Shown here one piece after another: positions 7,963 through 63,864 of a stretch of 64,000 nt of DNA. This DNA comes from Octopus sinensis (lineage: Eukaryota), in contig NC_043004.1 of assembly GCF_006345805.1 (NCBI RefSeq), positions 51,708,001-51,772,000 of the forward strand, in the 5' to 3' direction. The notes below the pieces were generated by a model. It saw nothing but the letters and a program-made list of their open reading frames with translations, did no database searches and had not been told where the DNA came from. The first letter of the stretch is position 1, and every line of letters starts with the position of its first letter. The translations under genes and the position numbers were made by a program.

Positions 7963-8413
7963 CCCCTTGCAGACAGGAAGCGGTACTATCCGCATCAAAA
8001 CATTGTGTGCGTGCATTGTGCGATGTCTCGCTCTGTGTGGCACTGCGTTTTCGGGTATACCACACTGAGAAAAGTCTGTAAATACACTGTAAATACACTG
8101 TAAAATTCCATTTATGAAAAATAATGTTGTTACTGAATGGCCTAATACCTATTTCTTTATTACCCACAAGGGGCTAAACGCAGAGGGAACAAAGAAGGAC
8201 AGACATAGGTATTAAGTCGATTACATCGACCCCAGTGCGTAACTGGTACTTAATTTATCAACCCCGAAAGGATGAAAGGCAAAGTCGACCTCGGCGGAAT
8301 TTGAACTCAGAACGTAACGGCAGACGAAATACCGCGAAGCATTTCGCCCGGCGTGCTAACGTTTCTGCCAGTACACAACACAGACTGTCAGTGATAAATC
8401 CGTCTGCAAGGGG
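7963..8413. mobile_element. TTAA-flanked MITE with nested SINE (8150-8370)
   Basis: TTAA|CCCCTTGCAGAC..GTCTGCAAGGGG|TTAA. Confidence 0.85.
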
Positions 8414-10301: not shown

Positions 10302-11938
10302 TCATCATTTAACGTCCGCTTTCCATGCTAGCATTTGACTGAGGTCTGGTGAACCAGACTCCAATCTGATCTGGCAGAGTTTCTACAGCTGGATGCCCTT
10401 CCTAATGCCAACCACTCCGAGAGTGTAGTGGGTGCTTTTACGTGACACCGGCACGAGGGCCAGTTTGGTGGTACTGGCAACGGCCATGTCCAAATGGTGC
10501 TTTTTACATGCCACCTGCACAGGAGCCAGTCCAGCGGCACTGGCGACATCCTCGCTCGAATGTTTCACGTGCCACCAGCACAAGTGCTAGTAAGGCAACG
10601 CGGTAACGATCACACTTGAATGATGTGCTTAACGTGCCATCGGCACGGAGTCCAGCTTGTTGCTCTGGCAACGATCTCACTCGTATGGTACTCTTAGCAC
10701 TCCACTAGCAACAGATGCCAGTCACCGAATTTGATTTTGACTTCGATTTCACTTGCCTTAACTGGTCTTCACAAGCAGAGTTTAGTGTCCAATGAAGAAA
10801 AGGCACGCATAATTGGACTGGTTACACCCCTAGCATAGGCCACAAGGTTATGGTCACACTTGCGCTTGGCGAGTCTTCTGCAGCACAGCTTATTTCCAGA
10901 GGTCCTGGTCACTAGTCATTGCCTCGGTGAGGCCCAATGTTTGCAGGTCATGCTTCACCACCTCATCCCAGGTCTTCCTGGGTTTACCTCTTCCACAGGT
11001 TCCCTCAACTGCAAGGGTGTGGCACTTTTTCACACAGCTATCCACATCCATTCTCGCCACATGACCATACCAGCGCAGTCGTCTCTCTTGCACACCACAT
11101 CTGATGCTTCTTAGGTCCAGCCTTTCTCTCAGGGTACTAACACTCAGTTGATTATGTACACTGGCATTACACATCTATCAGAGCATGCTGGCTTCATTCC
11201 TTGCAAGCTTACGCATGTCCTCAGCAGTCACAGCCCATGTTTCACTGCCATGTAGCATGGCTGTTCGTACACATGCGTCGTACAGTCTACCTTTTATTCT
11301 GAGCAAGAGGCCCTTTGTCACCAGCAGAGGTAAGAGCTCTCTGAACTTAGCCCAGGCTATTCTTATTCTAGCAGCAACACTTTCAGTGCACCCTCCTCCG
11401 CTACTGATTTGGTCACCTAAGTAACAGAAGCTATCAACTACTTCTAGTTTTTCTCCCTGGAATGTGGCGGAAGTTGTTCTCTGCACATTTTCAGTGTTAT
11501 ATATAGCTCCCGAGCATCTGCCACATATGAAAGCTATCTTCCTAGTTAGCCTTCCTTTGATATTGCTGCACCTCTTATGTGTCCATAGCTTACACTGGGT
11601 ACATCTTATAGAGTTTCTACCTACACCTTTTCTACAGATCGAGCAGGACCATCTACCTGAAGGGATTTGTGGTTTGCCTGCCTTCCTACATATTAGGACT
11701 TTGGTTTAAGCTAGGTTGACTCTAAGGCCCTTCGATTTTAATCCTTCTTTCCACACTTGAAACTTCTCTAGTTCTGTTAGTGACTCAGCAATTAGAGCAA
11801 GGTCATCAGCGTAGAGGAGCTCCCAGGGGCATCCTGTCTTGAATTCCTCCGTTATTGCCTGGAGGACTATGATAAATAGGAGGGGGCTGAGGACTGAACC
11901 TTGGTGGACCCCTACCTCTACCAGAATTCTTCACTGTA
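10302..11938 (-). mobile_element. 5'-truncated RTE/RTEX-like LINE (RT C-terminal half with PHD-like insert, 3'UTR tandem repeats, (ATG)n tail)
   Basis: GVHQGSVLSPLLF..LLYADDL..YLG..HGSETW..RRLRWYGHVARM..GRGKPRKTW; one in-frame stop at 11706-08 and a frameshift near 11175. Confidence 0.93.
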
Positions 11939-15998: not shown

Positions 15999-16558
15999 CT
16001 CCTGTCTCTTATAGGAAGCACTAGCACTTTCATACGTATACACTTGACATGAACTTCTGTCTACCAAACCCACTCACGAGGCTTTGGTCAGCTTCAGTAG
16101 AAGACATTTGCCCAAGGTGCTATGCAGTGGGACTCCAATCTTGAAACCATACATTATATATGCACAATACAGCTTAAATCTGAAGAACTGAAATAAACAT
16201 AAAGCTTCACTGAGGATTATTTAAAAACAGAATGAAAACATTCTTTCTACACTACTGATTTGTAGAAAAAGGAGGAGAAGGCGAGAGTTTCCCAACAGAC
16301 TTTTATATGATGTGTTAACTGCTTCACAAAGATGACATATTCAGCTTTCTTCTCTAATCAATAACAGTTGTGCATATGTATATGCAAACAACAGCTACCT
16401 GCAGTTTCCAACTGAATCCACTCTCAAAGCATCATTTGGCTTAGGACTATAGAAGATGCCCAAAGTTTCATGCAGTGGGACTTCTTAACATCATGACTAG
16501 AAAATGAACTTCTAAACCACACAACCATGCCTTTGCATGTATGTGTGTATAGATAATA

Positions 16559-16790
16559 TATATTTCTTTACTACTCACAAGGGGCTAAACACAGTGGGGA
16601 CAAACAAGGACAGACAAACGGATTAAGTCAATTACATCGACCCCAGTGCGTAACTGGTACTTAATTTATCGACCCCGAAAGGATGAAAGGCAAAGTCGAC
16701 CTCGACGGAATTTGAACTCAGAATGTAACGGCAGACAAAATACGGCTACACATTTCGCCCGGCGTGCTAATGTTTCTGCCAGCTCGCCGC
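16559..16790 (-). mobile_element. Full-length SINE B, alternative-tail subfamily (B2)
   Basis: 12-bp TSD GTATAGATAATA at 16547-58 and 16791-802; tail ends AGTAAAGAAATA. Confidence 0.92.
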
Positions 16791-21055: not shown

Positions 21056-23117
21056 GTAAGTTTTACAGCCACTTTTATGTTGTTCTCTGCTATTGTCTTG
21101 ATCCAGGATATCTCTGACCCAACAGCAATACTCTGTTTAACCCTTTAGCATTCACATTATTCTGTCAAAAGTAATGCTTAGGGGCAGACCCAGGAAGAAA
21201 TGGTATAAAGTGATGAGAAAGGATCTACAAGCTTTGGGACTCACAGAGGGGATGACAGGGGACTGAGATTCCTGATGGTTTGCCATGTTTGAAAAGACAC
21301 ACCAAGCTAAGTAAAAGTATGGTTGCCCTTGTGTCCAGGCCCGTCCCTTGCAACCCTGTCCAGCTGAGCATCCCTGATCTTGTGGGCTCATAATTGCTGG
21401 TGCCATGTAAAAAGCACCCATACTGGTGCTGGGTAAAAACATGCAGTGCACTCTGTAAAGTGGTTGGCATTAGGAAGAGCATCCAGCCATAGAAACCATG
21501 TCAAAACAGACATGGAGTCTGAACAGCCCTTCAGCTGGTCAGCTTCTGTCAAACCAGCCAACCCATGCCAACATGGAAAACAAACGTTAAATGATGATGA
21601 TGATTGTTTTGAATTAATAATGCATTATCTTGTAGCTTTGAGATTTCGAAGATGAGATTGTTTATTTTTAGAATGACATTGTTGGGTTGGTGTGAGAGGC
21701 CACATCTGGCCAGTTTGAACAAAACAGGTAGAATATTTTGGCCGATATGGCCAGTTAAAATGCTAAATAGTTAAAAATATTCCAGTTGCTACAATCTCAA
21801 TTTCTATTTAGACATAGCATATCAAGGACTCTATCATCTGATGTATCCTTCTATGTTAAACTCTGGGTCAGTTCTGGCCCAAAAGACCTTCAAACCTTTA
21901 GCATTTAAACCAGTTGTATCTGGCCCAAATATTCTGTTTGTTTTATGTCCAAACCAGCTAGACTCAGCTTCTCAAAACTACCCTACAATGTCATACTAAA
22001 AAGAAACAATCTTATTGTTGAAATCTCAAAGCTGTAAGACAATGCATAATTAATTCAAAACAGTGGATAAATAAGCATTACATTTGACAGAGTAATCTAA
22101 ATACTGAAGAGTTAAGGGTTAATACTATAAAATATTAAATAAAATCTTTTAGAAGTTTTTATTGCAATAAAATCTCTCTGTGTATAATAATTATGTTCCC
22201 TTCTTACGTCATACTGCTCTAACTAACCATTGGCTAGCCTCGTCATCCTAATTATCATAATGATAATTCTTTCTAATTTTGGCACAAAGCCAGCAGTTTT
22301 GAAGGTAGTAGGGAAAAGTCAATTACATGAACCCCAATATTTGATTCGTACTTTATTTTATTGACCCCAAAAGGATGAAAGACAAAGTTGGCCTCAACAG
22401 TGTTTGAGCTCAGAGCCAGCAGAAATGCCACTAAGCACTTTGCCTGTGGTTCTGCCGACCCACTGCCTTAATAATAATAATAATAATTGTAATAATAATA
22501 GGCACAAGGCCTGAAATTTTCAGGAGAGGGATAGTCAATTATATCGACCCCAGTACTCAACTGGTACTTAATTTATCAACCCCAAAAGGACGAAAGGCAA
22601 AGTTGATCTTGGCAGAATTTGAACTCAGAATGTAAAAATGTACAAAATATTGCTAAGCAATTTCACCTGGCATGCTAATGATTCTGCCAGCTCTCACTGC
22701 CTTAGCAACAACAACACCCACTTCTCCATGCTTTCATGGTCCAGACAGAATCCATTGAGGTTGACTTTTTACAGCTGGATGCCCTTCCTGTCACCTGCCC
22801 TCACCTATTTCCAAGCAAGGTCATAACTGTCTATGACTAGACATGTCACTATGGAAAAACTGGAAAGAAAAGCCATTTACAGCTGCCATATGATATCAAG
22901 ACAAGGATGACACACACACACGCACATACAATGGGCTTCTTTCAATTTCTGTCTACCAAATACATTTACGAGGCTTTGGTCAACCTGGAGTTACAGTAGA
23001 AGACAATTAACCCAATGTGCCATTCAGTGAGACCGAACTCAAAACCATATAATTTTGAAGTGAACTTCTTAGTGATACAGCCATCAACTTACATATTTTA
23101 AACTTATTATGTTTCAG

Positions 23118-27434: not shown

Positions 27435-28526
27435 AATAATAATAATAATAATGAAATTATTGTATACAGTGCTCAGGTGCACTACAACTTGTCAAAAGTG
27501 CGTATAAAGCATATGCAGTAATGTACAAATATCTGGGAAGTGAACAGTGTATGAGTCAGATACATGCTTGCGCGTGTATGGAGGGGAGAAAATCAGGTGT
27601 AGTGTTGGCGAATCTCAGGAAGCATGGAAGTTTTGAAGGGTGCAGTGCTCCGACAAATAACAACTGATGCCGGCAGTTTGTTCCATACTTCAGCAACTCT
27701 TAGCATGAAAAATTGTTTCCAAAAGTCATGGGAGCTGTGCTGTTTTCTGACTTTGTAAACATGTCCATGGGTGTTAGACAGGTGGAGTTTGAAAAGGTGC
27801 TCAGAGTTATTGTTTGTAAGATGGTTAATAATTTTATGGGTGTCTGCCAAGTCAGCTGCCAGACGTTGGAGTTTCAATGTATCCATGCCCAGGGAAGTAA
27901 GGCATTCAGAATATGGCAAATGCCTGATGGAGAGTATTCTCTTGGTTGCACATTGCTGAACGGTTTCCTGACGATTAATATCCTGGGCAAGATAGGGTTC
28001 TAGACTGGTGATGCAAATTCCAGGTGAGGTCTTACCACAGCTATATAAAGCCACAGATAGATAGATGGAGAGCGGCTCACAAAGGACTTGGTGAGTGATG
28101 CCAAGACACCCTCAGCCTTCTTTTTGGCAATTTTAGCAATGTGTTTTGTCCAACGCAAATCGCTGTCAACAATAACACCCAGGTCACGTTCACAAGAAGA
28201 ATTTTTGAGATTAGTGTTGTGGAGGGAGTAAGTAGATGCTGGGTTTTTCCTCCCAAAATGTATGGTGGTACATTTGTCCACAGCCAGCTTGAGTTGCCAG
28301 TCCATGATCCACTGCTGCATTGTGTCCAGGTCTGATTGCAATAAAGATCTATTGTGTACAGGATCTGTCCTCTTTATTTCGAGGTACAGCTTGATGTCAT
28401 CTGCATATTTCAGCACTGTGGCATTCTTTAAGTTGGCATCTATGCCATTAACATATGCAACAAATAAAAGGGGGGCAAGAACAGATCCCTGTGGTACACC
28501 AGATGTCATCTCATAGGGGGAAGAGT
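27435..28526 (-). mobile_element. 5'-truncated CR1-group LINE (RT), with (ATT)n tail
   Basis: SGVPQGSVLAPLLF..KYADDIKL..ERDLGV..VRPHLEFAS..RVAEVWNKLP; stops/frameshift near 28000. Confidence 0.92.
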
Positions 28527-28977
28527 TTATTTTCCTTGTTTTCCTTTTTGTGTTCCAGCCCAAAGTCTGTGGCAATGCTGCGGCATTGCCATTTGAAGAC
28601 AAACCAAAGTGATAGTTGTGCTTAACTTGGATTACCTGATAAAACATCATTTCAATTGAAAATTAAAATGTGTTCCCACAAGACCCACCACATGCTTCTA
28701 CTTACTCTACTGTAGGGCACTTTGGAGCCTTTAGACCAGGAATCTCTCTCAGCCTCTGCTCAGCGTGTTCATTGAGTCTGTTGCATAAGTGTCTACAAAA
28801 TAGATGATATTGCAGATAATTTCATAATCTTCATTATTTTTATACCTGCTTTCCATTCTGCTATAAATTTAACTATATTTAATGACACTATTCAGAAGCC
28901 CAAAGTTGTAGGTGTGTAGAAAAGGGAGCATGTAATGACAATAACTCTTCCTTTGCAATCTCATTTGATCACCAGGA

Positions 28978-32304: not shown

Positions 32305-33410
32305 TAATTCTTTTATTGGCCACAAGGGCTGACAAAAATCAATTATAACATAAAGGGACAAAACACAGGACGAAAGGTTACAAAGGGTTTTGTCCGTTTG
32401 TAAAAATCCGAGTAAAAAAGCAGTTTAACAACGAAAAACTCCCAATAAGGGGAGGCGTTACAAAAGGTTCCTGGTGGAAAAATCCATAAAAGCCAACGGG
32501 AGCCTGGTCAAAAGGGGGTAGAGAGCCCCTTTCTCCTTTTATATTACCTTTTTAATTACAGGTGTATCCTCATAATGGCTCCTTTCATACTGGCCATTCT
32601 TGCAACATTTATCCACCTTTCAGTAAACTTGCTATCGGACATCACTTCCTCTCTACTCTCACCTTCCTTTTCAAGTGAAACTTGAAAAAGTTGATGAGGC
32701 CTGGGCCAAAGAGGAAAGTGTCTGACCTTAGCCCTTTCAAACGGGTCCACCATACCACCTCTTTCGCTACAGCCACTAGGCAAAGGAAAACTGCCTTGCC
32801 CTCCCGGTTAAAGGAGGTCGGCGGGGCAATCCTCACTATGGATTCAGCTGATAGCCGGATCCGTCCTATACGCGACAGTAGCTGTTCAACATAAACCCAT
32901 AGTTCAGCAATACTCGGACACTGGGCGAGTGCATGCAGAACGGTTTCGTCGTCCTGACAGCACCTCGGGCAGGTCCGGCTGACGGCACTTCCATGCCGGT
33001 AACACTGCCAGGCAAGGGACCTCTGGAAATTATCCATTGGCCCCGGCCCGAAAGTCCTCCTGAACAGACTGCTAAGCTCATTATCGTCAACACCTAGAGT
33101 TTCCCCGAGAACATCGTCGCACTTTTCTTCCACTAACCCTCTATAGAATGCTAGAGTGGAACTACTACCGATCGCATTGCCCGCTTGGCGGAGGGCAGAG
33201 AGAGGTTGACGGTACTCGAGGTGCCAAGCGCCCTTTCTCGGTCTGCGTTTGATCCAGGTCTGCAGCTCTGTCAAAGAGACGAGCTGCGAAAAGTCGCGTC
33301 TGACAAAAGACGACCACACCTGTTCACCATCTAGGAAACGCTTGAGATGCTGTAGCCTGAGCGCATGTCTGCGCATCAGTAACCACGGCATGGCAAGGCC
33401 TCCGTTAATA
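32305..33410 (-). mobile_element. 5'-truncated Tx1/L1-group LINE: ORF2 C-terminus with zinc knuckle and 3'UTR
   Basis: GGLAMP.L..R..ALR..H; CPRC..DDETVLHAL..C knuckle; AATAAA then (ATT)n; (AAT)n on both flanks. Confidence 0.88.
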
Positions 33411-34340
33411 ATAATCATGATAATAATAATAATAATAATGTCTGAAATTTGGGGGAGGAGGATAGTTGATTACATCGACCCCAGTGCTTGAATGGTACTT
33501 ATTTTATCACCCACCAAAGGTTGAAAGACAAGGTTGACCTCAATGGAATTTCAACTCGGAATGCAAAGACAGATGAAATGCCACTAAGCATTTTGCCTGG
33601 CATGCTAACAGCTCTCCATGCTCATCACCTTAATAATAATGATGATGATGATGATAATCCTTTCTATTATCGGTGCAAGTCCTGAAATTTGTGGGGAGTG
33701 TGTAAGTTGATCACATCAGCCCCCAGTATTTGACTGGTACTTAATTTATTGACCCCCACCCCCACCCCACCAAAAGGACGAAAGGCAAAGTTGACCTTGG
33801 CAGAATTTGAACTCAGAATGTAGCGACAGACAAAATATCGCTAAGCATTTCACCTGCCAGCTTGCCATCTTAATAATAATAATAATAAAAAAAAAATAAT
33901 AACTTACCTCAGGTATTCAGTGACACTCTGTCTTTGAGCACTGGACAAGAGGGATGTGGCCTTGGAACTTCAAGTATTCTGAAGTTGAGGCAAACTACTA
34001 CTCTTGTTTGTTCAGTCATGCATGTGTGTATAAGTACATATATACATGCATACACACACACACACACACATAGTTCAAATAGAGGTTATAATATCCTCAT
34101 AAAGGGATGGTCTCATCCAAGGAAATACTGGTTGGATACCTAATATTTTTCGGTGGGTGGGTTAATATCCTTCAAATAATGGGTTTATTTATAAACCATG
34201 GTTTATAGTCATGTAAATGAAGAATAAGAAAATGGAGATATTGAAGTTAATAAGAGTTTATTATCAACAAAAATCGATCATTATCTCTTACAGCTGTTTC
34301 AATTAAGCACAGTGAAATTAAAAGATATTAAAATCATATA

Positions 34341-34763: not shown

Positions 34764-35420
34764 TAGAAAATATACCCTTAGAAAATATCGTGTGTTGTTT
34801 GAATCATCACAGCAGACTCCCATGATGATTCAGACAGCTAATGCATAATATTTTCTAAGTATATTTTTTCCCTCTCTGAAAAGATTAAACTCAGAAATAT
34901 GATTTTAATATCTTTTAATTTCACTGTGCTTAATTGAAACAGCTGTAAGAGATAATGATCAATTTTTGTTGATAATAAACTCTTATTAACTTCAATATTT
35001 CCATTTTCTTATTCTTCATATATATATATATATGGTGTGTGTGTGTGTATATATGTATGTATGTATATTTTTGTAAGTGTCTCATTTATAAATACATATT
35101 AACCTATCACACATGGCTAATATGAGCATAATGAGGCACCCATATCTGCATGGCTGAAACAGCTGTAAGATGTAGTTTATATTTATATTTGTATTTATTT
35201 ATATTCACTTATACATACTGTACTTATTGTATCATATTACTCTTTCATGTACATTGTTTTGTTCTATATTATTATGTTTGACCTTAATGTTCATATGTAG
35301 TGGTTTAATAAATTATGTGATTGGGTATTATCTGGTAGTTGATCATTGATTAAGATGTGTTTCTCCATTTTCTTATTTGTATATATATATATATATAATT
35401 AACCTTTTACTCTTTTTCAG

Positions 35421-35490
35421 GGAAATTTGTGATTTGATTCATTCTCATGGTGGTTTAGTTTATTTGGATGGTGCCAACATGAATGCTCAG
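35421..35490 (+). CDS. GLDC: GLDC exon 13: [23 protein letters not shown]
   Basis: [13 protein letters not shown] motif; TTTCAG acceptor, CAG|GTAAGG donor; 70 nt. Confidence 0.98.
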
Positions 35491-36442
35491 GTAAGGCAGG
35501 CTTAAAATTTTAAGGGATGGTGTAAGATGCTCACATCAGCTCCAACGTTCAACTGGTACTCATTTTATCAACCCCAAAGGGATGAAAGGCAAATTTGAAC
35601 CCAGAGCATAAAGACCTGAAAGAAATGCTGCCAAGCATACTGTCTGACTCCCTAACGATTCTGCCAGCTTGCCATCTTAAATATTGCAGTAATAATAGTA
35701 ATAATAATAAACACAATGATAATGCTTTCAAATTTTGGCACAAGACCAGCAATTTTGGGGACAGAGGCCTAAGCCAAATACATCGACCCCAGTGTTCAAC
35801 TGGTACTTATTTTATTGACCCCGAAAAGGAGAAAAGGCAAAGCCGACCTTGGTGCCATTTGAACTCAGAATGTAAAGACAGACGAAATGCCACCAAGCAT
35901 TTTGCCTGGCCTGCTAATGATTCTCTCAGCTCACCAGCTGAATAATGATAATCCTTTCTACAAGAGGCACAAGGTCTGAAATTTTTGGGGAGGGAACTTG
36001 TCGATTACATCGACCTCAATGTGTAACCGGTACTTAGTTTATTGACCCCTGAAAAGATAAATGGCAGAATTTTGAACTCAGAATGTAAGGACAGACGAAA
36101 GGCTGCTAAACATTTTCCCCAATACCATAATGAATCTGCTAGCTCACCACCTTAATAATAATTATAATAATAATAATAATGGTTTCAAATTTAACCACAA
36201 GGGCAGCTTTTTGAGGGAGGGGATGAGTCAGTTACATCGACCCCAATATGCAACTGGTACTTAATTTATCAATCCCCAGAAAGGATGAAAGGCAAAGTCA
36301 ATCTCAGCAGAATTTGAACTCAGAATGTAGCGATGGGTGAAATACCGCTTAGCATTTCTGCTAGCTTGCTGCCTCATCTTTAGGTTTAGCATGCTTTTTT
36401 GCTTTTTTTGTCTTGTTCTGACTTTCAATCTCAATATTTCAG

Positions 36443-41500: not shown

Positions 41501-41960
41501 GAGAAGAAATAATAATAATAATAATAACCTGAAGTGAAGACCAAGTGTAGTGCATGTGTTTAATTGGCAAAAATATTACCATTGCCAAATATAACAATAT
41601 TAAATTAAATCTTTATGCCAAAACTCCATGTTAATCTAATTCCCAATCATCAGCTTAATAACAGCATAGTTAATTCATTTATTTTCAAAATCAATTAATA
41701 TAAAGGTAGAATTTTTCAACAGAGGTATGGTAACGAGAGGGTTAATGGTGTACTTAGAAATGTTAAGCAAGCATCATCATCATCATCATTCAACTATAAA
41801 TACTGTTGTTCCCACAAGTGCCAAGTCACAACCTCCCTGCCAAAACAACATAATTAATGGAACAATAAAAAAAAAAATACAAAACTGGGACAAAAAAATA
41901 TCAGTGTAATCCCATAAAATCTTCTACACTTTTTAAAAGGGTTTTTCTCTTGTTCCTTAG

Positions 41961-42056
41961 ATCTGGTGGCCCATGAGTTTATCGTAGATTGTAGGCCTTT
42001 CAAGAAACTTGCCAACATTGAAGCTGTTGATATTGCCAAAAGACTGCAAGATTATG
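41961..42056 (+). CDS. GLDC: GLDC exon 16: [33 protein letters not shown]
   Basis: VAHEFI.D.R and D.AKRL.DYG; TAG acceptor, G|GTAAGT donor; 96 nt. Confidence 0.98.
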
Positions 42057-42641
42057 GTAAGTTTGTTTTTCATTTCTCATTAATTCCTGTTATCCTTGAT
42101 AATGTCGAGGCAAAATGCTGGCGCAGCTATTAGCACATAACCATGAGGCACAAGCACAGATGTGAGGCATAGCCATGGCTGTGTGATTAACAAGTTTGCT
42201 TCCCAGTCATATGGTTGGGTTTCAGGTTCAGTCTCCCTGTGTGGCACTTTAGGCAAGAGCCCTAGGCCCGTCATACATGTGAGTAGATTTGGTGGACAAA
42301 AACAGGAAGAAGTCCATTATATATATATATATTATATATACTTCTTGTGGAGGCACATGGCCTAGTGGTTAGAGCAGCTGACTTGCGGTCAAGGGATCGT
42401 GGGTTTGAATCTCAGACTGGGCGATGTGTGTGTTTATGAGCAAGACACCTAAGCTCCATGAGACTCCAGTGAACTTCTGCTGACTCTTTCGCCACTATTT
42501 TCTCTTACTCTTTCCTCCAGCATCTTGCAGCTCACCTGCGACGGACCGGCGTCCTGTCCAGGTGGGGAACCTATATGCCAAGGAAACCAGGAAACTGGCC
42601 CTTATGAGCCAGGCATAGCTCAGGAAGGAGCAAACAACAAT

Positions 42642-43285: not shown

Positions 43286-43320
<35 letters not shown>

Positions 43321-43324
<4 letters not shown>

Positions 43325-43990
43325 GTGGAAGCACATCGTTAGAGTTATCTAAAAGAATTTCTATCCATTACTCAACATTTAGGGATAGAAATAAACGGAA
43401 TAGTACCGGTCTCAGCAAACTGATTTGGGATTTAAAAGACCACAATGAACAATTTCATTTAGAATGGTTGATTCTCTCAATTTCGAAACCATATGACAAA
43501 GGCAAGGAATTCTGTCTTCTTTGCAATTCTGAGCTACTTTTCATTATTTTTTCTAAAAATACTCTAGTAAACACAGTTATAGAGCGAGCATACAGATCTA
43601 AGCATTGGCAAAAACACACATTTAGTGCATATAAGTAGTCTCTATCATTATATATAATTTAAACTTTAATTTCCTTTATATTTAACATTCACTATTAATA
43701 TCCCTACTCTTTCTGTAAGCTACTTATGACGTTATATCATATAACATTTTTTTAAACAATATTAATAGCGTTCTGTCTATCGCTATACAAATACATCACT
43801 TTTTGATAAAATGTTTTATTGACAAGTTTCGCTTTTTTCACTTTCCTGAGGAGAAGATTGCATTGTTTATACCATTTATTCTTTTGAATAGTATCAGTGG
43901 AATTTTCGAAACATGTGTCGAAAGTAAAAATATTTGATTACACCTGCATTAAACTCCATTTATTTATTCATATATACATATACATATATA
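43321..43990 (+). mobile_element. Penelope-like element 3' fragment: GIY-YIG endonuclease C-terminus plus pLTR with hammerhead
   Basis: Stop-free 105-codon frame 43321-43638: GSTSLELSKRISIHYSTF..NSTGLSKLIWDLKD..WLIL..KPY..CLLCNSE, followed by an AT-rich UTR with a hammerhead. Confidence 0.85.
43834..43930 (+). ncRNA. Type I hammerhead ribozyme, Penelope-like-element type
   Basis: Helix I ACTTTC 43840-45 / GAAAGT 43920-25; CTGAGGA 43846-52; helix II starting G43853-C43907; GAAA 43908-11; short helix III C-ATGT-G; GUC triplet ending 43919. Confidence 0.85.
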
Positions 43991-44250
43991 TATTAACTGT
44001 CACATGTTTTTCTTCTTAAATTTGTTATTTTTCACACCTATCATCTACTTTTGAACATCTACTAGTGATTCTAACTTCACTACTTCAGCGAACCAGTATT
44101 CGATTGAAATATGTCTGGGGGTTGTCTCCCATACTTGTTGTAATTATTAAAATCATGTCAGTTACGGAACTAAGATTGCTTTTTCCTCACATAATGAACG
44201 TACAAAAATACCAACTTACGTGGAGCCCATTTGACTTGCGTCTGTCTGTC

Positions 44251-44269
44251 CAGATAGATAGATAGATAA

Positions 44270-44300
<31 letters not shown>

Positions 44301-44520
44301 GATAGATAAATAGAGAGATAGATAGATAAATAGAGAGATAGATAGATAAATAGAGAGATAGATAGATAAATAGAGAGATAGATAGATAAATAGAGAGATA
44401 GATAGATAAATAGAGAGATAGATAGATAGATAAATAGAGAGATAGATAGATAGATAAATAGAGAGATAGATAGATAGATAGATAAATAGAGAGATAGATA
44501 GATAGATAGATAAATAGAGA
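44251..44520. repeat. GATA-derived satellite (16-mer GATAGATAAATAGAGA)
   Basis: Directly visible tandem array. Confidence 0.97.
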
Positions 44521-44700
44521 TATGTTTCTTTATTAGCCACACAGGGCTGCACACAGATAGAACAAATTACAAGGTAGAGCTTTTCTTTTGAAGGTTTAAA
44601 AAAAAAAAAAAAAAAGGAAGGGGGAGTTTCGATCAAAAGGGATCGTAAAAGGAGAGAAAGAGGACAAAAAAAGGGGGGGTTAAAAAAAAAAAAGAGAGAG
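44521..44700 (-). mobile_element. Probable 3' terminal fragment of a second Tx1-like family, embedded in GATA satellite
   Basis: TTTCTTTATTAGCCACACAGGGCT matches TTCTTTTATTGGCCACAAGGGCT at 32308; purine-rich body; GATA-type repeats on both sides. Confidence 0.55.
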
Positions 44701-44726
44701 ATAGATAGATAAATAGAGAGATAGAT

Positions 44727-44826
44727 NNNNNNNNNNNNNNNNNNNNNNNNNNNNNNNNNNNNNNNNNNNNNNNNNNNNNNNNNNNNNNNNNNNNNNNNNN
44801 NNNNNNNNNNNNNNNNNNNNNNNNNN
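44727..44826. other. Assembly gap (100 N)
   Basis: Exactly 100 N next to a GATA-type satellite, typical of a placeholder gap of unknown size. Confidence 0.99.
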
Positions 44827-45626
44827 TGCACTTGTGTAGGTTGAAGTGGCTGAGTATTCTACAGTCGCATGCACCATTAATCTATCCCTAAGCATGACTG
44901 TGTGTGTGTGTTGAAAAACTGACCCCTCCAAATTACAGGTACTGTCCACCTGACAAATTCTACTACATAGAGTTCACATCAATACAATTTCACCTAAAGG
45001 GCTTAGATTTAGATTGAAGCTGTGTGATAGGATTGAACCAGGAACGTAATGACTGAGAAGTTTACTGCTCAACTACTCTACTATGACTGCACGCACTCAC
45101 ACATCCACCTACAGGCACACATTCTTGCTACATATCCACAACACAGCCACCCATGTTTATCTACCTCAGTGGCTCTTCACATAGGCAGTAGCCTCCCACC
45201 ACCACCACCACCATTATGGCTTACTGGTTAGTGTGTTTGACTCATGATTGTAAGATTGTGGTTTCGATTCCTGGACTGGGCTATGCGTTGTGTTCTTAAG
45301 CAAGACACTTTATTTCACATTGCTCCAGTCCACTCAGCTGGCAAAAATGAGTGACACTGTGACAGACCAGTGTCACATCCTGGGGAATATACATGACATG
45401 GAAACCAGAAAACCAGCCCTTAGGAGCCAGTATGACCCAAGAAGGTAACTTTACCGTTAGCATTTTGGTGGCACCCCCTTGAAAAATGATAGAACGATCA
45501 TCCTTTCAACTATTTTAATCATAGCTCTACTCAATCAGGGCTGATTTGGGTTGGACAGCAACACCTTGACCACTATTACGAATGCTACAACCATCACCAC
45601 TACTAACATCTTCTCTCGTATTTCAG

Positions 45627-45691
45627 CAATCCGTAAAGAAATCCAAGATATCATCGATGGAAAGCTGGATCGTAAAGTTAATCCATTGACT
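45627..45691 (+). CDS. GLDC: GLDC exon 17 (as assembled): AIRKEIQDIIDGKLDRKVNPLT
   Basis: IR.EI..I..G..D..VNPL motif; TTTCAG acceptor, ACT|GTAAGT donor; 65 nt. The preceding GFHAPT exon is not found. Confidence 0.93.
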
Positions 45692-45962
45692 GTAAGTATC
45701 CTTCTCTCTCTCTCTCTCTCTCTGCCTGTCTTTCTCTGTTGTTACTTTATTGTATTGGCTGTTTGTGTGCCTACTTCTGTCTATGAGTGGAACATACATA
45801 TTCTGCAAATGTGTGTATATATATATATAAATATATGTGGTGTGTGTGTGAGTGTATACCTTACACTTTTATTCCTCCTTATTCAGAGTTAAAATTCTGC
45901 CAGTGTTTGTAATGTCCTTCTTAGATTGATGAAATAAGTAGTTATATATATATATATATATC

Positions 45963-54399: not shown

Positions 54400-55170
54400 A
54401 AAAGTGGAAAGCATAACCAAGTTGTTATCATTTAATTTGAGAATTCTTTTTTTCTTTTTTTTTTCTGAACAAATATTGTTTTATTTTTAATAAAATTATG
54501 CTCCTTTTGATGTGTTGGGGTATTGTTGCCTTCCAGTCCTAGTATGGCTAATTAACTAAGTGGTTTTCTTCTTATGTGTTGGTAATTGGCATATCTTTCT
54601 GTTTTTTTCAATCATTTTCACATTGTCCAGTATATTTTTTCTTTTAAGTTTCATTATTTTGTAGCACTGAGCTGACCTCAGCTTCATAAATCTCTGCCAG
54701 TGCATGCCTGGTTGAGTGGGTCAGTGTCTGGATCTCAACAGTTATATCTTGGGGTAGGAATCTGGAGTGACTTACATGTAATTATATTTTTCATATTGGG
54801 GCAGAAACTGTAAGAAACTTGAACATCTATTAACCATTTTATTATAACTGTGGCTATCTGGGAAATGCTTATCTATCAAGGCAAGGAACTTTTTGCCTAT
54901 GTTCATTTTAACATTCAAAGACAAAGAGGTGAACCATATACTCTTTCTAAAAGGTAGGGGTTTGCATTACCTTCTCTTTGATGCCACCCTTAGCCAAGGC
55001 TTTATTATAGTAGGAGACTACCTTATTGAATATTTCCTTAGAGGAGACATGACTTAAGCTGAGCTTATCTCAGTTTTACAAAATAATGAAACTCAAAAGA
55101 AAATGTATATTGGACTATGTGAAAGCAATTTCAAAATGAGATTATAATAATCACTAGTCTTCTTTCTGAC
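54400..55170. mobile_element. Two decayed Penelope-like GIY-YIG fragments in opposite orientation
   Basis: Plus 55055-55165 reads AELISVLQNNETQKKMYIGLCESNFKMRLYNH*SSF; minus 54600-54750 reads NC*DPD..PLN..C..YEAEVSSVLQNNET*KKKYTG.CE. The two align at roughly three-quarters identity by eye. Confidence 0.7.
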
Positions 55171-56618
55171 ATGTAGCAAGCCATATCTGGTACCTGAAGG
55201 CCAGCAATGTCCCACCACATCATCAAGTGGAACGTCATAGAATGATCCCCACCATACATTAATGGGTAAAAAATGTATGGGCCTTGTATAGCCAAAAGAA
55301 CTTATATCCTTTCTAAATCCAAATATTCCACTGATCTACTGAATTCTGGATCCAAAATTGGCATCATGATCAAACTAAAGAACACCACCCTCTCTAGATT
55401 AAGTGTACAGTCTCACAAACTTTAACTCTCCCTGGTTGATTTAACCACATATCTCCCCTCCATACATTTTTTTTTACTTGATCCCTTTCTTCATTTTCCT
55501 CTTGCTCTTTCTCATTTTTCCCTAAGAGAGCAGGCATGTTGTATTCTGAGCCTGTAAAATTGCTCAGTAGAACATGACACTGTACAGCTTTGTTGAACTT
55601 TTGTATTGTGAGAGGAAGAAAACTTATAGCAGCTCATATTTAAATCTTGTACTCTTTTACTCTTTTACTTGTTTCAGTCATTTGACTGTGGCCATGCTGG
55701 AGCACCGCCTTTAGTCGAGCACATCGAACCCGGGACTTATTCTTTGTAAGCCCAGTACTTATTCTATCAGTCTCTTTTGCCGAATTGCTAAGTGACGGAG
55801 ACGTAAACACACCAGCATCGGTTGTCAAACAATGCTAGGGGGACAAACACAGACACTCGAACACATACATACATAGGAGTGGCTGTGTGGTAAGTAGCTT
55901 GTTTACGAACCACATGGTTCCGGGTTCAGTCCCACTGCGTAGACAGATAAAACATCAAAGGCACTTAAGTCTTTCTCTTAATATGTGAGATTTCTAAGGT
56001 GGTGAGCTGGCAGAATTGTTAGTACTCTGGATTGAATGAGTTCAAATTCTGCTGAGGTCGACTTTGCTTGCATCCTTTTGGGGTCGATGAAATAAGTACC
56101 AGTTACGCACTGGGATCAATGAAATTGACTCCCCAACTCCCCCAAATTTCAGGCCTTATGCCTTTGGTAGAAAAGAACATGTGAGATTTCTTTGCTGTAA
56201 ATATCTAAAAAATGTTAAGAACCCCTTCGGTCCTGAATGGTCATAGGATAACACCTGGAACGTTACCCTCTGAGGCACAAGTCCCACCAAGGTTGTTTAT
56301 AGAAGACCAGCAGTCGCCCATGCATACCAGCCTCCCCTCCTTTCCATGCTACTGCTGTTATCCAAGGGAAAGGCAAAGGGGCCGATACAGCTTGGCACCA
56401 GTGAACTGGAGCAATGTGAAATAAGATGTCTTGCTCAAGAACACAACACACAGTTGGTCCAGGAATCGAACTCACTACCTCATGATTGTGAGACCAACGC
56501 TATAACCACTGAGCCTTTAAATATATACTAATTCAAGATTTGAACTCCATTAATAAAACAAATAAAGGGAGGTAACTGTAACTTGTCAATGAAAAGTGAA
56601 TTTCTTTTGTTTGACATA

Positions 56619-58715: not shown

Positions 58716-59815
58716 ATTCATCATCATCATCATTGTTCAATGGAATTTACCATGCTACGCCAGACTTCACGGTCCATCATAGCATTACGGAGGTCCTGTT
58801 GCTGGATGCCTGTATCCCTGGAGATTACATCAGGGTAGGAGAGTGTGCGCCCTCTGGTGTTGCGAGTAGATGGCTTCCAGAGGAGAAGAGTAGAAATTGC
58901 CTCGTTTTCAGCTCTACAACAATGTCCAGCAAACTGGACTCTCCTACCTTTCACAAGAGATGACACAGGTGGTAGTTTCCCATATATTTGCATTTTGGTT
59001 GGATGACGCTTCCATGAGAGATTTTGAGCACTCATAAGGAGGCGAGTGTAGGTTCCATCCAACCGCATCTCAAGCTTCTTTGATAACGTCCAGGTTTCTG
59101 AGCCATATAGTAGAATTGGTTCAACTGTGGCTTTGAAGATTTCAAGTTTGAAGTCTCTACTTAGATTTGATGACCAGATCTTATGCATGTCATTACAGGC
59201 TGACCAGGCCATACCCTTTCTAGTTAGAAAATCTTTTCCAGATGATATGTATGACCCAAGATATTTGTAATCAGAAACCATATTTAAGGGCGCATTGTTG
59301 AGAGTATGGATGATGCAATCACTGTTGGACAGGCACTTGTTTATATATTCAGTCTTGGCCTCATTGAGATAAAGACCTACACAATTTGAGGCTTGTTCGA
59401 GAGATTGTAAAAGAGATTGGGCATTGGAGAGAGAATCACTGATAAGAGCAATGTCTTCAGCAAAGTCAGTGTCTGTTAAGTATTCAGCTGGGTGTCTGGA
59501 ACTTCTTCTAGGTTTTATTTCAAAGCCCTTGCCAGAAATGGTATCAACTGACATACGTAGCACATAGTCAACGACAATGACGAAGAGAAATGGGGCGAGT
59601 GTATCTCCCTGCAGTATTTCGGCTTTGATTGAGAAAGATGATGTTTCTCTGTCAGGGGTTAGGATGGTTGAAGACGTATCTGTGTAGAGGACCTTGATGG
59701 CAGAAATGATTTTGTCTGGTATCCCATAGAGCTTAAGGATTTCAAACATCTTGTACCTATCTACAGAGTCAAACGCTTTAGAAAAGTCTACAAACACCAT
59801 CGCAATGGTTTTCAT
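58716..59815 (-). mobile_element. 5'-truncated RTE-clade LINE, uninterrupted 361-aa RT frame
   Basis: FVDFSKAFDSV..QGDTLAPFLF..FAED..YKYLGS..LLYGSETW..FAGHC..; (ATG)n tail at 58716-58733. Confidence 0.95.
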
Positions 59816-61552
59816 GAAGTTTGGATGTTGACTGATATTCGTGCATCTGTAGCTTTTGTGATTACCTGAAGGGTGGGGCTAGTATGTGGAAGCTGTTTGA
59901 GAATCACTTGTTTAAATTTGATGGTTGAAGTCCTTCAGAACTGCTTCTGGTGTAAATGTTACAAGTTGCCTGGAATACAGCTCTGCTCACTTCTTGTGTC
60001 TAGTTGGGTGTTTTGTGAAAGCATGAATTTGAAGTTTACATTATAATAAATGTTAAAAATCTGCATTGGAAAGATAGTCTTTGATAGTCTGCAGAAAGAT
60101 AATCTTTGATCACTACATGTTAGTTAGTTAGTTAATTTTTTGGCTCAAAAAGCAAAAAGCAAGGCCATGTAGGGAGACATGGAGTTATGTATAGGGTGGT
60201 GTTCATGTAAAGAGTTCAGGCCACTTTAGGTCAAGGGAGACTTTGAACCAAGCGGTCATCGGCATCTTCACCATCTCCTTCAATTGAGATGTGTGTGTGG
60301 GGGGTGATTACAGGTCAAGAATTGAACTTCATAGCTACTTCAGATGTTCTTCTCTCATACTTCTCTGCAGGCTTTCTCCATAGACAGCAAGACTGACAGA
60401 TCTTGTCGATGAAGGGCCACATTTTCCAAAGGTGACAGAGGAGTGATTTGAAGAAAATTTAGTTGGTATACTTATCAGGTTGAGCATCCACATAGAGGCA
60501 TTCCCTTGTTAGTTTGAAGTAAACTTTACCACTGTTGTTGTAAAGTCCCAGATCAGCTGCAGCTGAATAAATCTAAGATGAAAGATGTTCTAATCACAAC
60601 AATCTCATTGCTTGTCAATCAGAAGTTATATTGTTCAATAAAATTATTGTTTAAGATAGTAGATTCTCTTTTTCTCTTTTCTCTTTTACTTGTTTCAGTC
60701 ATTTGACTGCGGCCATGCTGGAGCACCGCCTTTAATCGAGCAACTCGACCCCGGGACTTATTCTTTTGTAAGCCCAGTACTTATTCTATCGGTCTCTTTT
60801 GCCGAACCGCTAAGTAACGGGGACATAAACAAACCAGCATCGGTTGTCAAGCAATGCTAGAGGGACAAACACAGACACACAAACACACACACGCATATAT
60901 ATATGCATATATACGACGGGCTTCTTTCAGTTTTCATCTACCAAATCCACTCACAAGGCTTTGGTCGGCCCGAGGCTATAGTAGAAGACACTTGCCCAAG
61001 ATGCCACGCAGTGGGACTGAACCCGGAACCATGTGGCTGGTAAACAAGCTACTTACCACACAGCCACTCCTACGAGGGATTTAGCCACAATATTCAGCAG
61101 ATTCAGCACTTGTGTGTCAGCTCTTGATTGAACAATCGAGGCCAAGTGATTAGAGTTCCACTCACGATTGCAAGATCAAGGTTTCAATTTCAAGACTGGT
61201 TATTTGTGTTGAAATCTATTCTTGAATAAAACGCATCATTTCGTTTTGCTCCAGTCCACACAGCTGTGAATGAGTAACCCTACGGTTGACTGGCATCCCG
61301 TTCAAGGTGAGGGCTGAGATCTCAGTCACTTATATGTCATGGAAACCAAATAAAAGACTCTACAAATTATAGAACTTGAGACAGTAATTTCCAGGGGATA
61401 ATTAACTAACTCAGTTGCTTCCCAACCACACGGCTTTGGGTTCAGTCCTACTGTATTGTACTTTGAGCAAGTTTCTTCTAATATAAACCCAGGCCCTCCA
61501 ATGCATTGTGAGTGGAATTGGCAGACAGCCACTAAAGGAAGCCTATTGTATA

Positions 61553-63239: not shown

Positions 63240-63832
63240 GAGACAGAACCACCTTCAAGCAACTCAACATTGAATGCTATTATCTATGATAGAGATATAT
63301 AAGATTAAATATTATCAACTTAATACCTGCAATTACTATCTGATTCATATACATTAGATAAACTACATGTGTTTCATGACAATAATTGCTAAAGTAGAAG
63401 GTTTAGAAGTCTATTGATCTGACTATACTGCCAATCTTCAGGTCTGGATTATATAAAACTACTTTACTATTTACAACTTATATACAGACATGATAATTAA
63501 AATTATACATTTATAAATCATCGAAAAAATTTATCTTAACTAAAAACGAACAAATAAAGCATAATAACTGGAAAAAGAAAATGAAGTTAACATATCTTTT
63601 TGGTATGTCTTCTTACTCACCTCGAATTAACCATGGCTAGTAAGTGAACAACGTATAGTCCATCATAGAGAGCTACAGTGTAGGGGAGATAATTCATATT
63701 AAAAAAGTTAATAAGAATTATCTCCCCTACATTGCAGATAGTAATTGCAGGTATTAAGTTGATAATATTTAATCTTACATATTTCTATCATAGATGCCGT
63801 TCAATGTTGTGTTGCTTGAAGGTGGTTGTCTC
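63240..63832. mobile_element. Foldback/MITE with about 100-bp TIRs and TTAA flanks
   Basis: 63240-63342 is the near reverse complement of 63735-63832; internal 17-bp perfect hairpin 63679-63731. Confidence 0.8.
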
Positions 63833-63864
63833 TTAAACCTATCTATCTGTCTGTATGTTTATCT

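What the first reader, a model, noticed from the sequence alone, without database searches (positions are those of the whole stretch)
43834..43930. Hammerhead ribozyme with a complete catalytic core on the sense strand of a GLDC intron
Seen: every conserved core base is present (CUGAGGA, G10.1-C11.1, GAAA, U16.1, C17). Helix I is 6 bp, extendable to 11 with one bulge, and helix II is long. Helix III is only 2-3 bp, but its strand ACAUGUGU is self-complementary over 8 bp with two G-U pairs. Established: Penelope-like elements carry minimal type I hammerheads that cleave mainly as dimers. Inference: GLDC pre-mRNA could be cut after C43919, in the intron that precedes the missing exon. That would favour splicing across a severed intron, dimer-dependent cleavage, or loss of transcripts.
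Basis: partly seen in the sequence, partly recalled or inferred. Interest (0 to 1): 0.85.

Follow-up and report, generated by a model that had tools for sequence, protein, structure and literature searches.

The report
Hammerhead ribozyme in a retrotransposon remnant
The hammerhead ribozyme motif is real, but it is the usual ribozyme at the tail of a truncated Penelope-like retrotransposon that landed in an octopus GLDC intron, and a lone copy like this is unlikely to cut the gene's RNA.

Summary
Window 43840-43925 (+) is a complete type I hammerhead. It has CUGAGGA, a G10.1-C11.1 pair, GAAA, U16.1 and C17 at 43919. Helix I is 6 bp, helix II is a 55-nt hairpin, and the helix III strand ACAUGUGU is 8 nt and self-complementary.

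Chance is very unlikely, at about 1e-5 per window. Rfam Hammerhead_1 matches end to end but below threshold (25.7 bits against 34).

The motif is not free-standing. It lies about 200 nt downstream of the stop codon of a 104-codon relic of a GIY-YIG endonuclease. The relic's family has about 1,440 relatives. The long ones carry a reverse transcriptase and the hallmarks of the 'Hydra' clade of Penelope-like elements (PLEs).

The roughly 650-bp fragment is 5'-truncated and bracketed by (TA)n microsatellites, the known target of that clade. Three independent related copies from other assemblies carry a homologous hammerhead at the same place, with compensatory changes in helices I and II. Two more decayed copies lie in this window.

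This is therefore a new member of a known kind. Cleavage of GLDC pre-mRNA is not supported. Such ribozymes need a second matching copy to form helix III, and none is nearby. The 'missing exon' coincides with a 100-N assembly gap.

The parts
43289..43319 (.). (TA)n microsatellite at the 5' edge of the retroelement fragment
   Evidence: Read directly from the sequence. (TA)n is the reported insertion target of Hydra-clade PLEs (PMC8557442).
43324..43638 (+). 5'-truncated ORF relic: C-terminal two thirds of a PLE GIY-YIG endonuclease, 104 codons plus the stop at 43636-38
   Evidence: Translation. 1,440 homologues at E<=1e-3, best 2.5e-24. Alignment shows the conserved G-T, R, H, W, PY, CxxC, E and N positions. 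Long homologues carry RT motifs and a CxCX5C linker.
43639..43839 (+). 3' untranslated region of the element upstream of the ribozyme, with blocks shared by sister copies (TTTAAACA 43751-58, TAGCGTTCT 43766-74)
   Evidence: Alignment with L008 and L011 downstream regions.
43840..43845 (+). Hammerhead helix I, 5' strand (ACUUUC)
   Evidence: Compensatory changes in sister copies.
43846..43852 (+). Catalytic core box CUGAGGA (C3-A9)
43853..43907 (+). Helix II: 55-nt imperfect hairpin beginning with G10.1-C11.1
   Evidence: It is present in both the MFE and the centroid fold. It is homologous to the 50-59-nt helix II of L008, L011 and L013, with compensatory pairs.
43908..43910 (+). Core G12 A13 A14
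43911..43918 (+). Helix III strand ACAUGUGU (A15.1 to U16.1). It forms only 2 bp within one molecule and is self-complementary over 8 nt in a dimer.
   Evidence: All four family copies keep an 8-nt self-complementary strand (helix 3, 100% of cells paired).
43919..43919 (+). C17, the predicted cleavage site (3' of this base)
   Evidence: Position follows from the hammerhead numbering and the Rfam alignment. Cleavage was not tested.
43920..43925 (+). Helix I, 3' strand (GAAAGU)
43926..43969 (+). Short 3' tail of the element
   Evidence: Aligns in part with the tails of L008 and L011.
43970..43994 (.). (TA/CA)n microsatellite at the 3' edge of the fragment
   Evidence: Read directly from the sequence.
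34864..34965 (+). Second, decayed copy of the same ribozyme family. The core box is CUGAAAA (G8 changed to A), the helix III strand is the palindrome ACAGCUGU, and position 17 is A. A (TA)n run follows at about 35018-35033. It lies on the sense strand of an earlier GLDC intron.
   Evidence: Family covariance model R1, 38.2 bits, E 2e-7. Sequence.
63345..63452 (-). Third, weak copy of the family (CUGAAGA ... GAAA ACACAUGU A, with a 10.1-11.1 mismatch)
   Evidence: Model R1, 20.4 bits, E 0.008. Sequence.
41960..42058 (+). GLDC exon upstream of the host intron ([32 protein letters not shown])
   Evidence: tblastn with O. bimaculoides XP_014785832.
44727..44826 (.). 100-N assembly gap in the same intron. 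It probably hides the exon encoding FHAPTMSWPV...CDSL.
   Evidence: Argonauta has that exon at L001 40481-40590.
45626..45697 (+). Next GLDC exon found downstream (AIRKEIQDIIDGKLDRKVNPL)

Best explanation
The motif is the hammerhead ribozyme that belongs to the 3' end of a Penelope-like retrotransposon (PLE) of the 'Hydra' clade.

A 5'-truncated copy of about 650 bp (43324 to about 43969) was inserted into a (TA)n microsatellite in an intron of an octopod GLDC gene, in the same orientation as the gene. The copy holds the end of the endonuclease ORF, the 3' UTR with the ribozyme, and a short tail.

In the parent element the ribozyme is thought to process transcripts of tandem or partial-tandem copies. 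Two copies pair through their self-complementary helix III strands and swap helix I strands, forming a double hammerhead.

Here the catalytic core and helices I and II are intact. The copy is alone, however. Its helix III cannot form within one molecule beyond 2 bp, and the 21-bp helix II leaves no loop-loop tertiary contact. It is therefore expected to be inert, or nearly so, in GLDC pre-mRNA.

Shown: the anatomy of the motif, its membership of a PLE fragment, and its homology to ribozymes in sister copies. Inferred: the processing role in the parent element, and the lack of effect on GLDC.
For: 1. The motif is complete and not a chance match.
2. An ORF relic lies directly upstream on the same strand. 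It has 1,440 homologues, best E 2.5e-24.
3. The long homologues P0172 and P0216 (the latter from Argonauta hians) show the Hydra-clade hallmarks. These are DKT, YRDDGL or FRDDGL reverse-transcriptase motifs, a CxCX5C linker, GIY...YIG with no cysteines between them, CxxC before the conserved E, and CxH after the conserved N. This matches the published definition of the clade, which also reports (TA)n targets and readily detected hammerheads (PMC8557442 section 11).
4. P0141 gives a weak Pfam GIY-YIG hit.
5. The fragment is bracketed by (TA)n.
6. Contigs carrying the closest protein relatives have a homologous ribozyme downstream of the ORF. L008 has CACC CUGACGA [50 nt] GAA ACAUAUGU C GGUG. 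L011 has the same layout with an A13-to-G change. L013 has intact cores and decayed helices. Their 3' UTRs align with the window.
7. On the four-copy alignment 78.6% of cells pair, against 27-42% when the partners are slid. Nine pairs change on both sides, against 2-4 when slid.
8. A family model finds two more decayed copies in the window, one again followed by (TA)n.
9. The literature reports that such motifs show no detectable cleavage alone and low cleavage as dimers, and that most occur as single motifs from truncated PLEs (PMC4209133).
Against: - The window copy itself lacks the reverse transcriptase and the linker, so the clade assignment rests on homologues.
- Pfam does not recognise RT or GIY-YIG in the long homologues at significant scores. 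PDB sequence searches gave nothing meaningful.
- Two more distant copies with full ORF ends (L007 from Argonauta and L012) run into microsatellite soon after the stop codon. They show no hammerhead there.
- Only four ribozyme copies support the covariation analysis, and two of them are decayed.
- The Rfam score is below the gathering threshold.
- Inactivity in vivo is inferred, not measured. The intact core and the 105 open codons suggest a fairly young copy that could retain some activity.
Confidence: 0.88

Rival explanations
1. The ribozyme is active on the host transcript. The sense-strand hammerhead cuts nascent GLDC pre-mRNA after C43919, either as a homodimer between two transcripts or with the help of RNA chaperones. 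This lowers GLDC output or forces splicing across a severed intron.
For: The core is intact, the orientation is sense, helix I and helix II are well formed, and the centroid fold equals the hammerhead fold. The predicted homodimer is 10 kcal/mol more stable than two monomers.
Against: - No second compatible copy lies in the window. The other sense copy at 34864 has a G8-to-A core change and non-matching helix I and III strands.
- The helix III self-duplex is only -6.0 kcal/mol, so pairing between two molecules at pre-mRNA concentrations should be rare.
- Published min-hammerheads did not cleave as monomers (PMC4209133).
- The motif is absent from the orthologous Argonauta intron.
Confidence: 0.06
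2. The motif is a solo monomer of a non-autonomous 'non-LTR retrozyme', meaning a small hammerhead-bearing tandem repeat mobilised by PLEs, rather than the tail of an autonomous PLE.
For: Animal type I hammerheads with a short palindromic helix III are typical of retrozymes. Retrozymes are reported to derive from PLE pseudo-LTRs, and solo copies exist (PMC7229834 abstract; 2026 preprint).
Against: The ribozyme follows directly on an endonuclease ORF relic with its stop codon, on the same strand. The same ORF-UTR-ribozyme order is found in sister copies. The window has no tandem repeat of the unit.
Confidence: 0.04
3. The motif is a chance match to the hammerhead consensus in AT-rich intron sequence.
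For: The Rfam score is below the gathering threshold. Infernal's E-value scales to about 0.6 expected matches of this score per 2.7-Gb genome. The fold z-score is only -1.44.
Against: - Expected frequency is about 1e-5 per window.
- Homologous ribozymes occur at the same position in independent related elements, with compensatory changes.
- Further family copies lie in the window.
Confidence: 0.01
4. The motif is an exapted, conserved intronic ribozyme of the host gene, like the amniote intronic hammerheads HH9 and HH10.
For: It is on the sense strand, in an intron, with an intact core.
Against: It has transposon flanks, namely the ORF relic and (TA)n on both sides. The orthologous Argonauta hians intron (L001 39407-40480) shows no similarity.
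Confidence: 0.01

Closest known systems
Hammerhead ribozymes of Penelope-like elements (Cervera & de la Pena 2014, PMC4209133)
   Same: Type I topology, conserved core and a G10.1-C11.1 pair. Helix III is very short and palindromic, which implies action as a dimer. Helix II is larger than usual. The motif lies in the terminal repeat or 3' region of a PLE. Most genomic copies are solitary motifs from truncated elements.
   Different: Helix II is far longer here (50-59 nt in the family, against stems of about 6-8 bp). There is no extra nucleotide between A9 and 10.1. Helix I is a full 6 bp.
Hydra clade of C-terminal EN+ Penelope-like elements (Craig et al. 2021, PMC8557442)
   Same: CxCX5C linker, no CCHH cysteines between GIY and YIG, CxxC and CxH around the conserved E and N, a DKT motif, (TA)n insertion sites, hammerheads present, and occurrence in Mollusca.
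   Different: The window holds only the last 104 codons plus the 3' UTR. CxH reads SKH in this copy. Cephalopod members were not singled out in the text I could read.
Rfam RF00163 Hammerhead_1
   Same: Full-length match to all 45 model positions, including the 8-nt palindromic helix III.
   Different: The score is 25.7 bits, below the gathering score of 34. A 51-nt insertion in helix II makes the default filters miss it.
Animal non-LTR retrozymes (Cervera & de la Pena 2020, PMC7229834; 2026 preprint 10.64898/2026.07.22.740005)
   Same: Type I hammerhead with an unstable helix III. Evolutionary link to PLE terminal repeats. Many intronic copies are known.
   Different: This copy is not a tandem non-coding repeat. 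It is attached to an endonuclease ORF relic.
Amniote intronic hammerheads HH9/HH10 (de la Pena & Garcia-Robles 2010; recalled, not re-read here)
   Same: Sense-strand hammerhead inside an intron of a protein-coding gene.
   Different: Those are deeply conserved, have a stable helix III and are active as monomers. This one is a lineage-specific transposon remnant.

Membership tests
Hammerhead ribozyme, type I | Conserved core: C3 U4 G5 A6 N7 G8 A9, G12 A13 A14, A15.1-U16.1, and H17 not G | tested here: met
   CUGAGGA 43846-52, GAA 43908-10, A43911/U43918, C43919.
Hammerhead ribozyme, type I | Three helices around the core, with helix I open (type I) | tested here: met
   Helix I is 6 bp (plus 5). 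Helix II is 7 bp and extends further. Helix III is 2 bp within one molecule, or 8 bp as a dimer.
Hammerhead ribozyme, type I | Reaches the Rfam RF00163 gathering score | tested here: not met
   25.7 bits against 34. No hit at gathering on the whole window. The shortfall comes mainly from the 51-nt helix II insertion.
Hammerhead ribozyme, type I | Structure supported by covariation among homologues | tested here: met
   Four copies. 78.6% of cells pair, against 27-42% when slid. Nine pairs change on both sides, against 2-4 when slid. The sample is small.
Hammerhead ribozyme, type I | Site-specific self-cleavage | not testable with these tools
   Needs in vitro transcription or RNA-end mapping.
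Penelope-like element, Hydra clade | [quoted passage not shown] | tested here: inconclusive
   The window copy retains only the endonuclease C-terminus. Homologues P0172 and P0216 show RT motifs followed by GIY...YIG. Pfam support is weak (GIY-YIG E 0.017 in P0141).
Penelope-like element, Hydra clade | CxCX5C linker; no CCHH cysteines between GIY and YIG; CxxC and CxH flanking the conserved E and N | tested here: met
   Seen in P0128, P0133, P0141 and P0172. The window keeps CLLC and E, and has SKH in place of CxH. Criteria are from PMC8557442.
Penelope-like element, Hydra clade | Insertion into (TA)n and frequent 5' truncation | tested here: met
   (TA)n lies on both sides of the fragment. 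Copy 2 is followed by (TA)n. L007 and L012 run into TA/CA repeats.
Penelope-like element, Hydra clade | Hammerhead motif in the terminal region | tested here: met
   Present in the window, L008, L011 and L013.
Non-LTR retrozyme | Tandem non-coding repeats of about 170-400 bp, each with a hammerhead | tested here: not met
   The unit has no tandem copy in the window. An ORF relic adjoins the ribozyme.

The most novel reading that the evidence does not exclude
The intact sense-strand hammerhead does cleave a fraction of nascent GLDC pre-mRNA, for example by pairing between transcripts at the gene or with chaperone help. A young Penelope-like insertion would then act as a ribozyme-based brake on a core metabolic gene in an octopus.
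Probability: 0.04. Interest if true: 0.55.

Novelty: new member of a known kind. Interest (0 to 1): 0.18.

Why it matters
The practical value lies in annotation. This family of cephalopod PLE hammerheads has a 50-59-nt helix II, which puts it below Rfam's threshold and outside its speed filters. Copies will therefore go unannotated. Three lie in this 64-kb window alone.

The result also ties a Hydra-clade PLE tail to its ribozyme in octopods, and it supplies a small family model for genome-wide counting.

It does not point to a new mechanism of gene control. Hammerhead-bearing retroelement remnants in introns are common in animals.

Tried and rejected
- Rfam at gathering threshold on the whole window, and an E-value search of 351 nt, gave no hammerhead. 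The match appeared only on 95 nt.
- A BLASTN self-comparison of 42-46 kb found no second copy of the ribozyme region. It found only microsatellite matches.
- Orthologue route: O. bimaculoides XP_014785832 is not on record as a gene position. Two window ORFs, including the one across the ribozyme, are not on record either.
- The Argonauta hians GLDC locus was fetched (L001). Its orthologous intron has no similarity and no hammerhead.
- The word-indexed protein search with the ORF relic found nothing. The exhaustive HMMER search did find the family.
- Pfam on ten family proteins gave nothing at E<=0.01. PDB sequence searches gave only spurious cytochrome hits or none.
- The distant PLE copies L007 and L012 have no hammerhead after the ORF, which runs into microsatellite. 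L002-L006 and L016 end, or are interrupted, before the expected position.
- An exact-pattern scan of metagenome contigs for the family ribozyme gave 0 hits.
- No paper mentions the SRA runs that hold the sister copies, so their species is unknown. The supplements of PMC8557442 are not held.
- A heterodimer between the 43.9-kb and 34.9-kb copies was considered and rejected. Helix I cross-pairing fails at the first pair, and helix III cross-pairing has two central mismatches (sequences).

Full report
**The observation.**
- Helix I is ACUUUC (43840-45) paired with GAAAGU (43920-25). Five further U-A pairs follow beyond one bulged C.
- The core box CUGAGGA is at 43846-52.
- Helix II is a 55-nt hairpin at 43853-43907 that opens with G10.1-C11.1.
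- GAAA is at 43908-11.
- The strand ACAUGUGU is at 43911-18. It forms only A-U and C-G around an AUGU loop within one molecule, but it is self-complementary over all eight bases.
- C17 is at 43919.

The centroid RNA fold is exactly helix I plus helix II. A tblastn search with O. bimaculoides GLDC places the exons on the + strand. The motif lies in the intron after exon 41960-42058. The coordinates, the strand and the anatomy are therefore confirmed.

**Is it chance?** My type I descriptor finds one hit in the window on both strands, and none in 300 block-wise dinucleotide shuffles. A factorised Markov estimate for helix I >= 6 bp, helix II >= 4 bp and an 8-nt palindromic helix III gives 7e-11 per nucleotide. 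That is about 9e-6 per window and 0.4 per 2.7-Gb genome. With helix II >= 7 bp it is twenty-fold less.

Rfam gives nothing at gathering threshold and nothing in a 351-nt E-value search. On 95 nt, Hammerhead_1 (RF00163) matches all 45 model positions at 25.7 bits, against a gathering score of 34, with E 9.4e-5. The 51-nt insertion in helix II costs score and defeats the filters. The Rfam consensus itself writes helix III as an 8-nt palindrome (ACGCGCGU), the dimer-type helix, and the candidate fits it.

**What surrounds it.** The stretch from 43324 to about 43969 is bracketed by (TA)n runs at 43289-43319 and 43970-43994. Its first 315 nt form an open frame of 104 codons ending in a stop at 43636-38. 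The word-indexed protein search found nothing for it. An exhaustive HMMER search of 1.84 billion representatives found 1,440 relatives at E <= 1e-3, the best at 2.5e-24. The match typically covers the C-terminal 100 residues of proteins of 120-290 aa.

Two long relatives, P0172 (658 aa) and P0216 (468 aa, annotated as hypothetical in Argonauta hians), show what the family is.
- They carry a DKT motif and YRDDGL or FRDDGL reverse-transcriptase boxes.
- A CxCX5C linker follows.
- Next is VVY...YIG (GIY-YIG) with no cysteines in between.
- CxxC lies just before the conserved E, and CxH just after the conserved N.

This is feature for feature the published description of the 'Hydra' clade of C-terminal-endonuclease Penelope-like elements. 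That description also reports that almost all families insert into (TA)n, that hammerheads are readily detected, and that the clade occurs in Mollusca (PMC8557442 section 11). Pfam sees only a weak GIY-YIG signal in one member. PDB sequence searches were uninformative. The assignment therefore rests on motifs and architecture rather than on a curated model.

**Homologous ribozymes in sister copies.** I fetched the contigs that encode the closest protein relatives. These are Logan assemblies of runs SRR11869384-94, whose species I could not determine.
- The contigs with P0125 (L008-L010) carry CACC CUGACGA [50 nt] GAA ACAUAUGU C GGUG about 310 nt after the position equivalent to the stop codon.
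- The contig with P0124 (L011) carries the same layout with an A13-to-G change.
- The contig with P0129 (L013) has intact core boxes, the 8-nt strand AUAUAUGU and decayed helices. It also has a second copy on the opposite strand.

The whole 3' untranslated regions align with the window, including shared blocks well upstream of the ribozyme.

On the four-copy alignment, 78.6% of cells form standard pairs. With the 3' partners slid by one to three columns the figure is 27-42%. Nine of 21 pairs show changes on both sides, against 2-4 when slid. Helix III pairs in every copy. L008's motif is also best matched by Hammerhead_1, weakly. With four sequences the covariation is modest. Together with the conserved position behind the same ORF, however, it excludes chance and shows that the ribozyme is part of the element.

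**More copies in the window.** A covariance model built from the four copies was run over the window with filters off. It recovers the candidate at 94 bits and finds two more copies.
- The first is at 34864-34965 (+), at 38.2 bits and E 2e-7. Its core box reads CUGAAAA (G8 changed to A). It has a perfect palindrome ACAGCUGU, A17 and a 4-bp helix I. A (TA)n run follows about 65 nt later.
- The second is at 63345-63452 (-), at 20.4 bits, with a mismatch at 10.1-11.1.

Further protein relics of the same element family lie at 54780-55045 (-) and 55031-55359 (+), in a head-to-head arrangement. The genome evidently holds many decaying copies.

**How it most likely works, and what it does here.** In PLEs the ribozymes sit in the terminal repeats. 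They are thought to process transcripts of tandem copies. Two copies pair through the palindromic helix III strands to give a double hammerhead (PMC4209133).

That paper reports three relevant results. A single min-hammerhead showed no detectable cleavage. Dimeric and trimeric constructs cleaved weakly, mostly at non-physiological Mg2+. Most genomic motifs are solitary remnants of truncated elements.

The window copy fits that picture.
- The helix III self-duplex is worth only -6.0 kcal/mol, against -13.3 for the Rfam consensus.
- The predicted homodimer is domain-swapped and 10 kcal/mol better than two monomers. It needs a second identical copy, however.
- The only other sense-strand copy is 9 kb upstream. 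It has a dead core and non-matching helix I and III strands.
- Helix I is a continuous stem and helix II runs for about 21 bp. [quoted passage not shown]

I conclude that the motif is structurally intact but functionally stranded. Cleavage of GLDC pre-mRNA is possible in principle but unlikely to be significant. This last step is inference.

**The 'missing exon'.** The exon encoding FHAPTMSWPVTGTLM.EPTECEDK..CDSL is indeed absent from the window. The same intron contains a 100-N scaffold gap at 44727-44826, flanked by arrays of a 20-nt GATA-rich repeat. Argonauta hians has the exon in the expected position (L001 40481-40590). An assembly gap is the simplest explanation, and no ribozyme-related biology is needed. 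The orthologous Argonauta intron (1.07 kb) has no similarity to the ribozyme region. This fits a lineage-specific insertion.

**Comparison and novelty.** The closest known things are the PLE hammerheads of Cervera and de la Pena (2014) and the Hydra-clade PLEs of Craig et al. (2021). The motif differs from the published min-hammerheads in three ways. Its helix II is very long (50-59 nt across the family). It has no extra base between A9 and 10.1. Its helix I is a full 6 bp. It fails Rfam's gathering score. It is not a retrozyme array, and it is not a conserved host ribozyme of the HH9/HH10 type.

I file it as a new member of a known kind. Its main value is for annotation, because this cephalopod family is systematically missed by default Rfam searches. 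Interest is low.

**Host organism.** The GLDC exons are about 90% identical in protein to O. bimaculoides and less so to Argonauta hians. The window therefore comes from an octopod other than O. bimaculoides. I could not name the species.

Noticed in passing
window 34864-34965 (+): A decayed second copy of the same PLE hammerhead family. It has a G8-to-A core change, the palindrome ACAGCUGU and A17, and a (TA)n run follows at about 35018-35033. It lies on the sense strand of the GLDC intron just upstream of exon 35416-35493.
   Followed up: partly
window 63250-63840 (-): A weak third hammerhead-family match at 63345-63452 (-). It lies inside a unit of about 590 bp bounded by inverted repeats of about 100 nt (63250-63340 against 63740-63840). 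This could be a PLE inverted arrangement or a foldback/MITE-like element.
   Followed up: no
window 54780-55359: Relics of the same Hydra-like PLE protein family in head-to-head orientation. 54780-55045 (-) matches the region between RT and EN of P0172. 55031-55359 (+) matches the endonuclease part. The family model found no ribozyme downstream.
   Followed up: partly
window 44727-44826 and 44240-44726: A 100-N assembly gap flanked by arrays of a 20-nt GATA-rich tandem repeat. The GLDC exon encoding FHAPTMSWPV...CDSL is missing from the window and probably lies in this gap.
   Followed up: partly
window 58733-59878 (-), 28003-28662 (-), 32645-33469 (-): LINE-type reverse-transcriptase relics (Pfam RVT_1 at E 8e-15 and 1e-15, plus a weak zf-RVT hit) on the strand antisense to GLDC.
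   Followed up: no
window 11181-11705 (-): An ORF of 175 aa with a PHD-finger match (Pfam E 3e-6) inside a GLDC intron. Probably part of another mobile element.
   Followed up: no
window, many sites (e.g. 8143-8371, 16554-16782, 22475-22663, 33392-33620): Dense families of SINE-like repeats of about 200-280 bp, some with AAT-rich tails, in both orientations. Abundant (TA)n, (CA)n and (CATA)n microsatellites.
   Followed up: no
L013 69-175 (-) and 770-876 (+): One 1.1-kb contig carries two family hammerheads on opposite strands about 600 nt apart. This is the inverted arrangement reported for PLE insertions.
   Followed up: no
L007 5408-5710 and L012 2600-2648: In two more distant Hydra-like PLE copies the ORF stop is followed almost at once by long TG/TA/ACAT microsatellites, and no hammerhead is seen. 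Either the tail was lost or these subfamilies keep the ribozyme elsewhere.
   Followed up: partly
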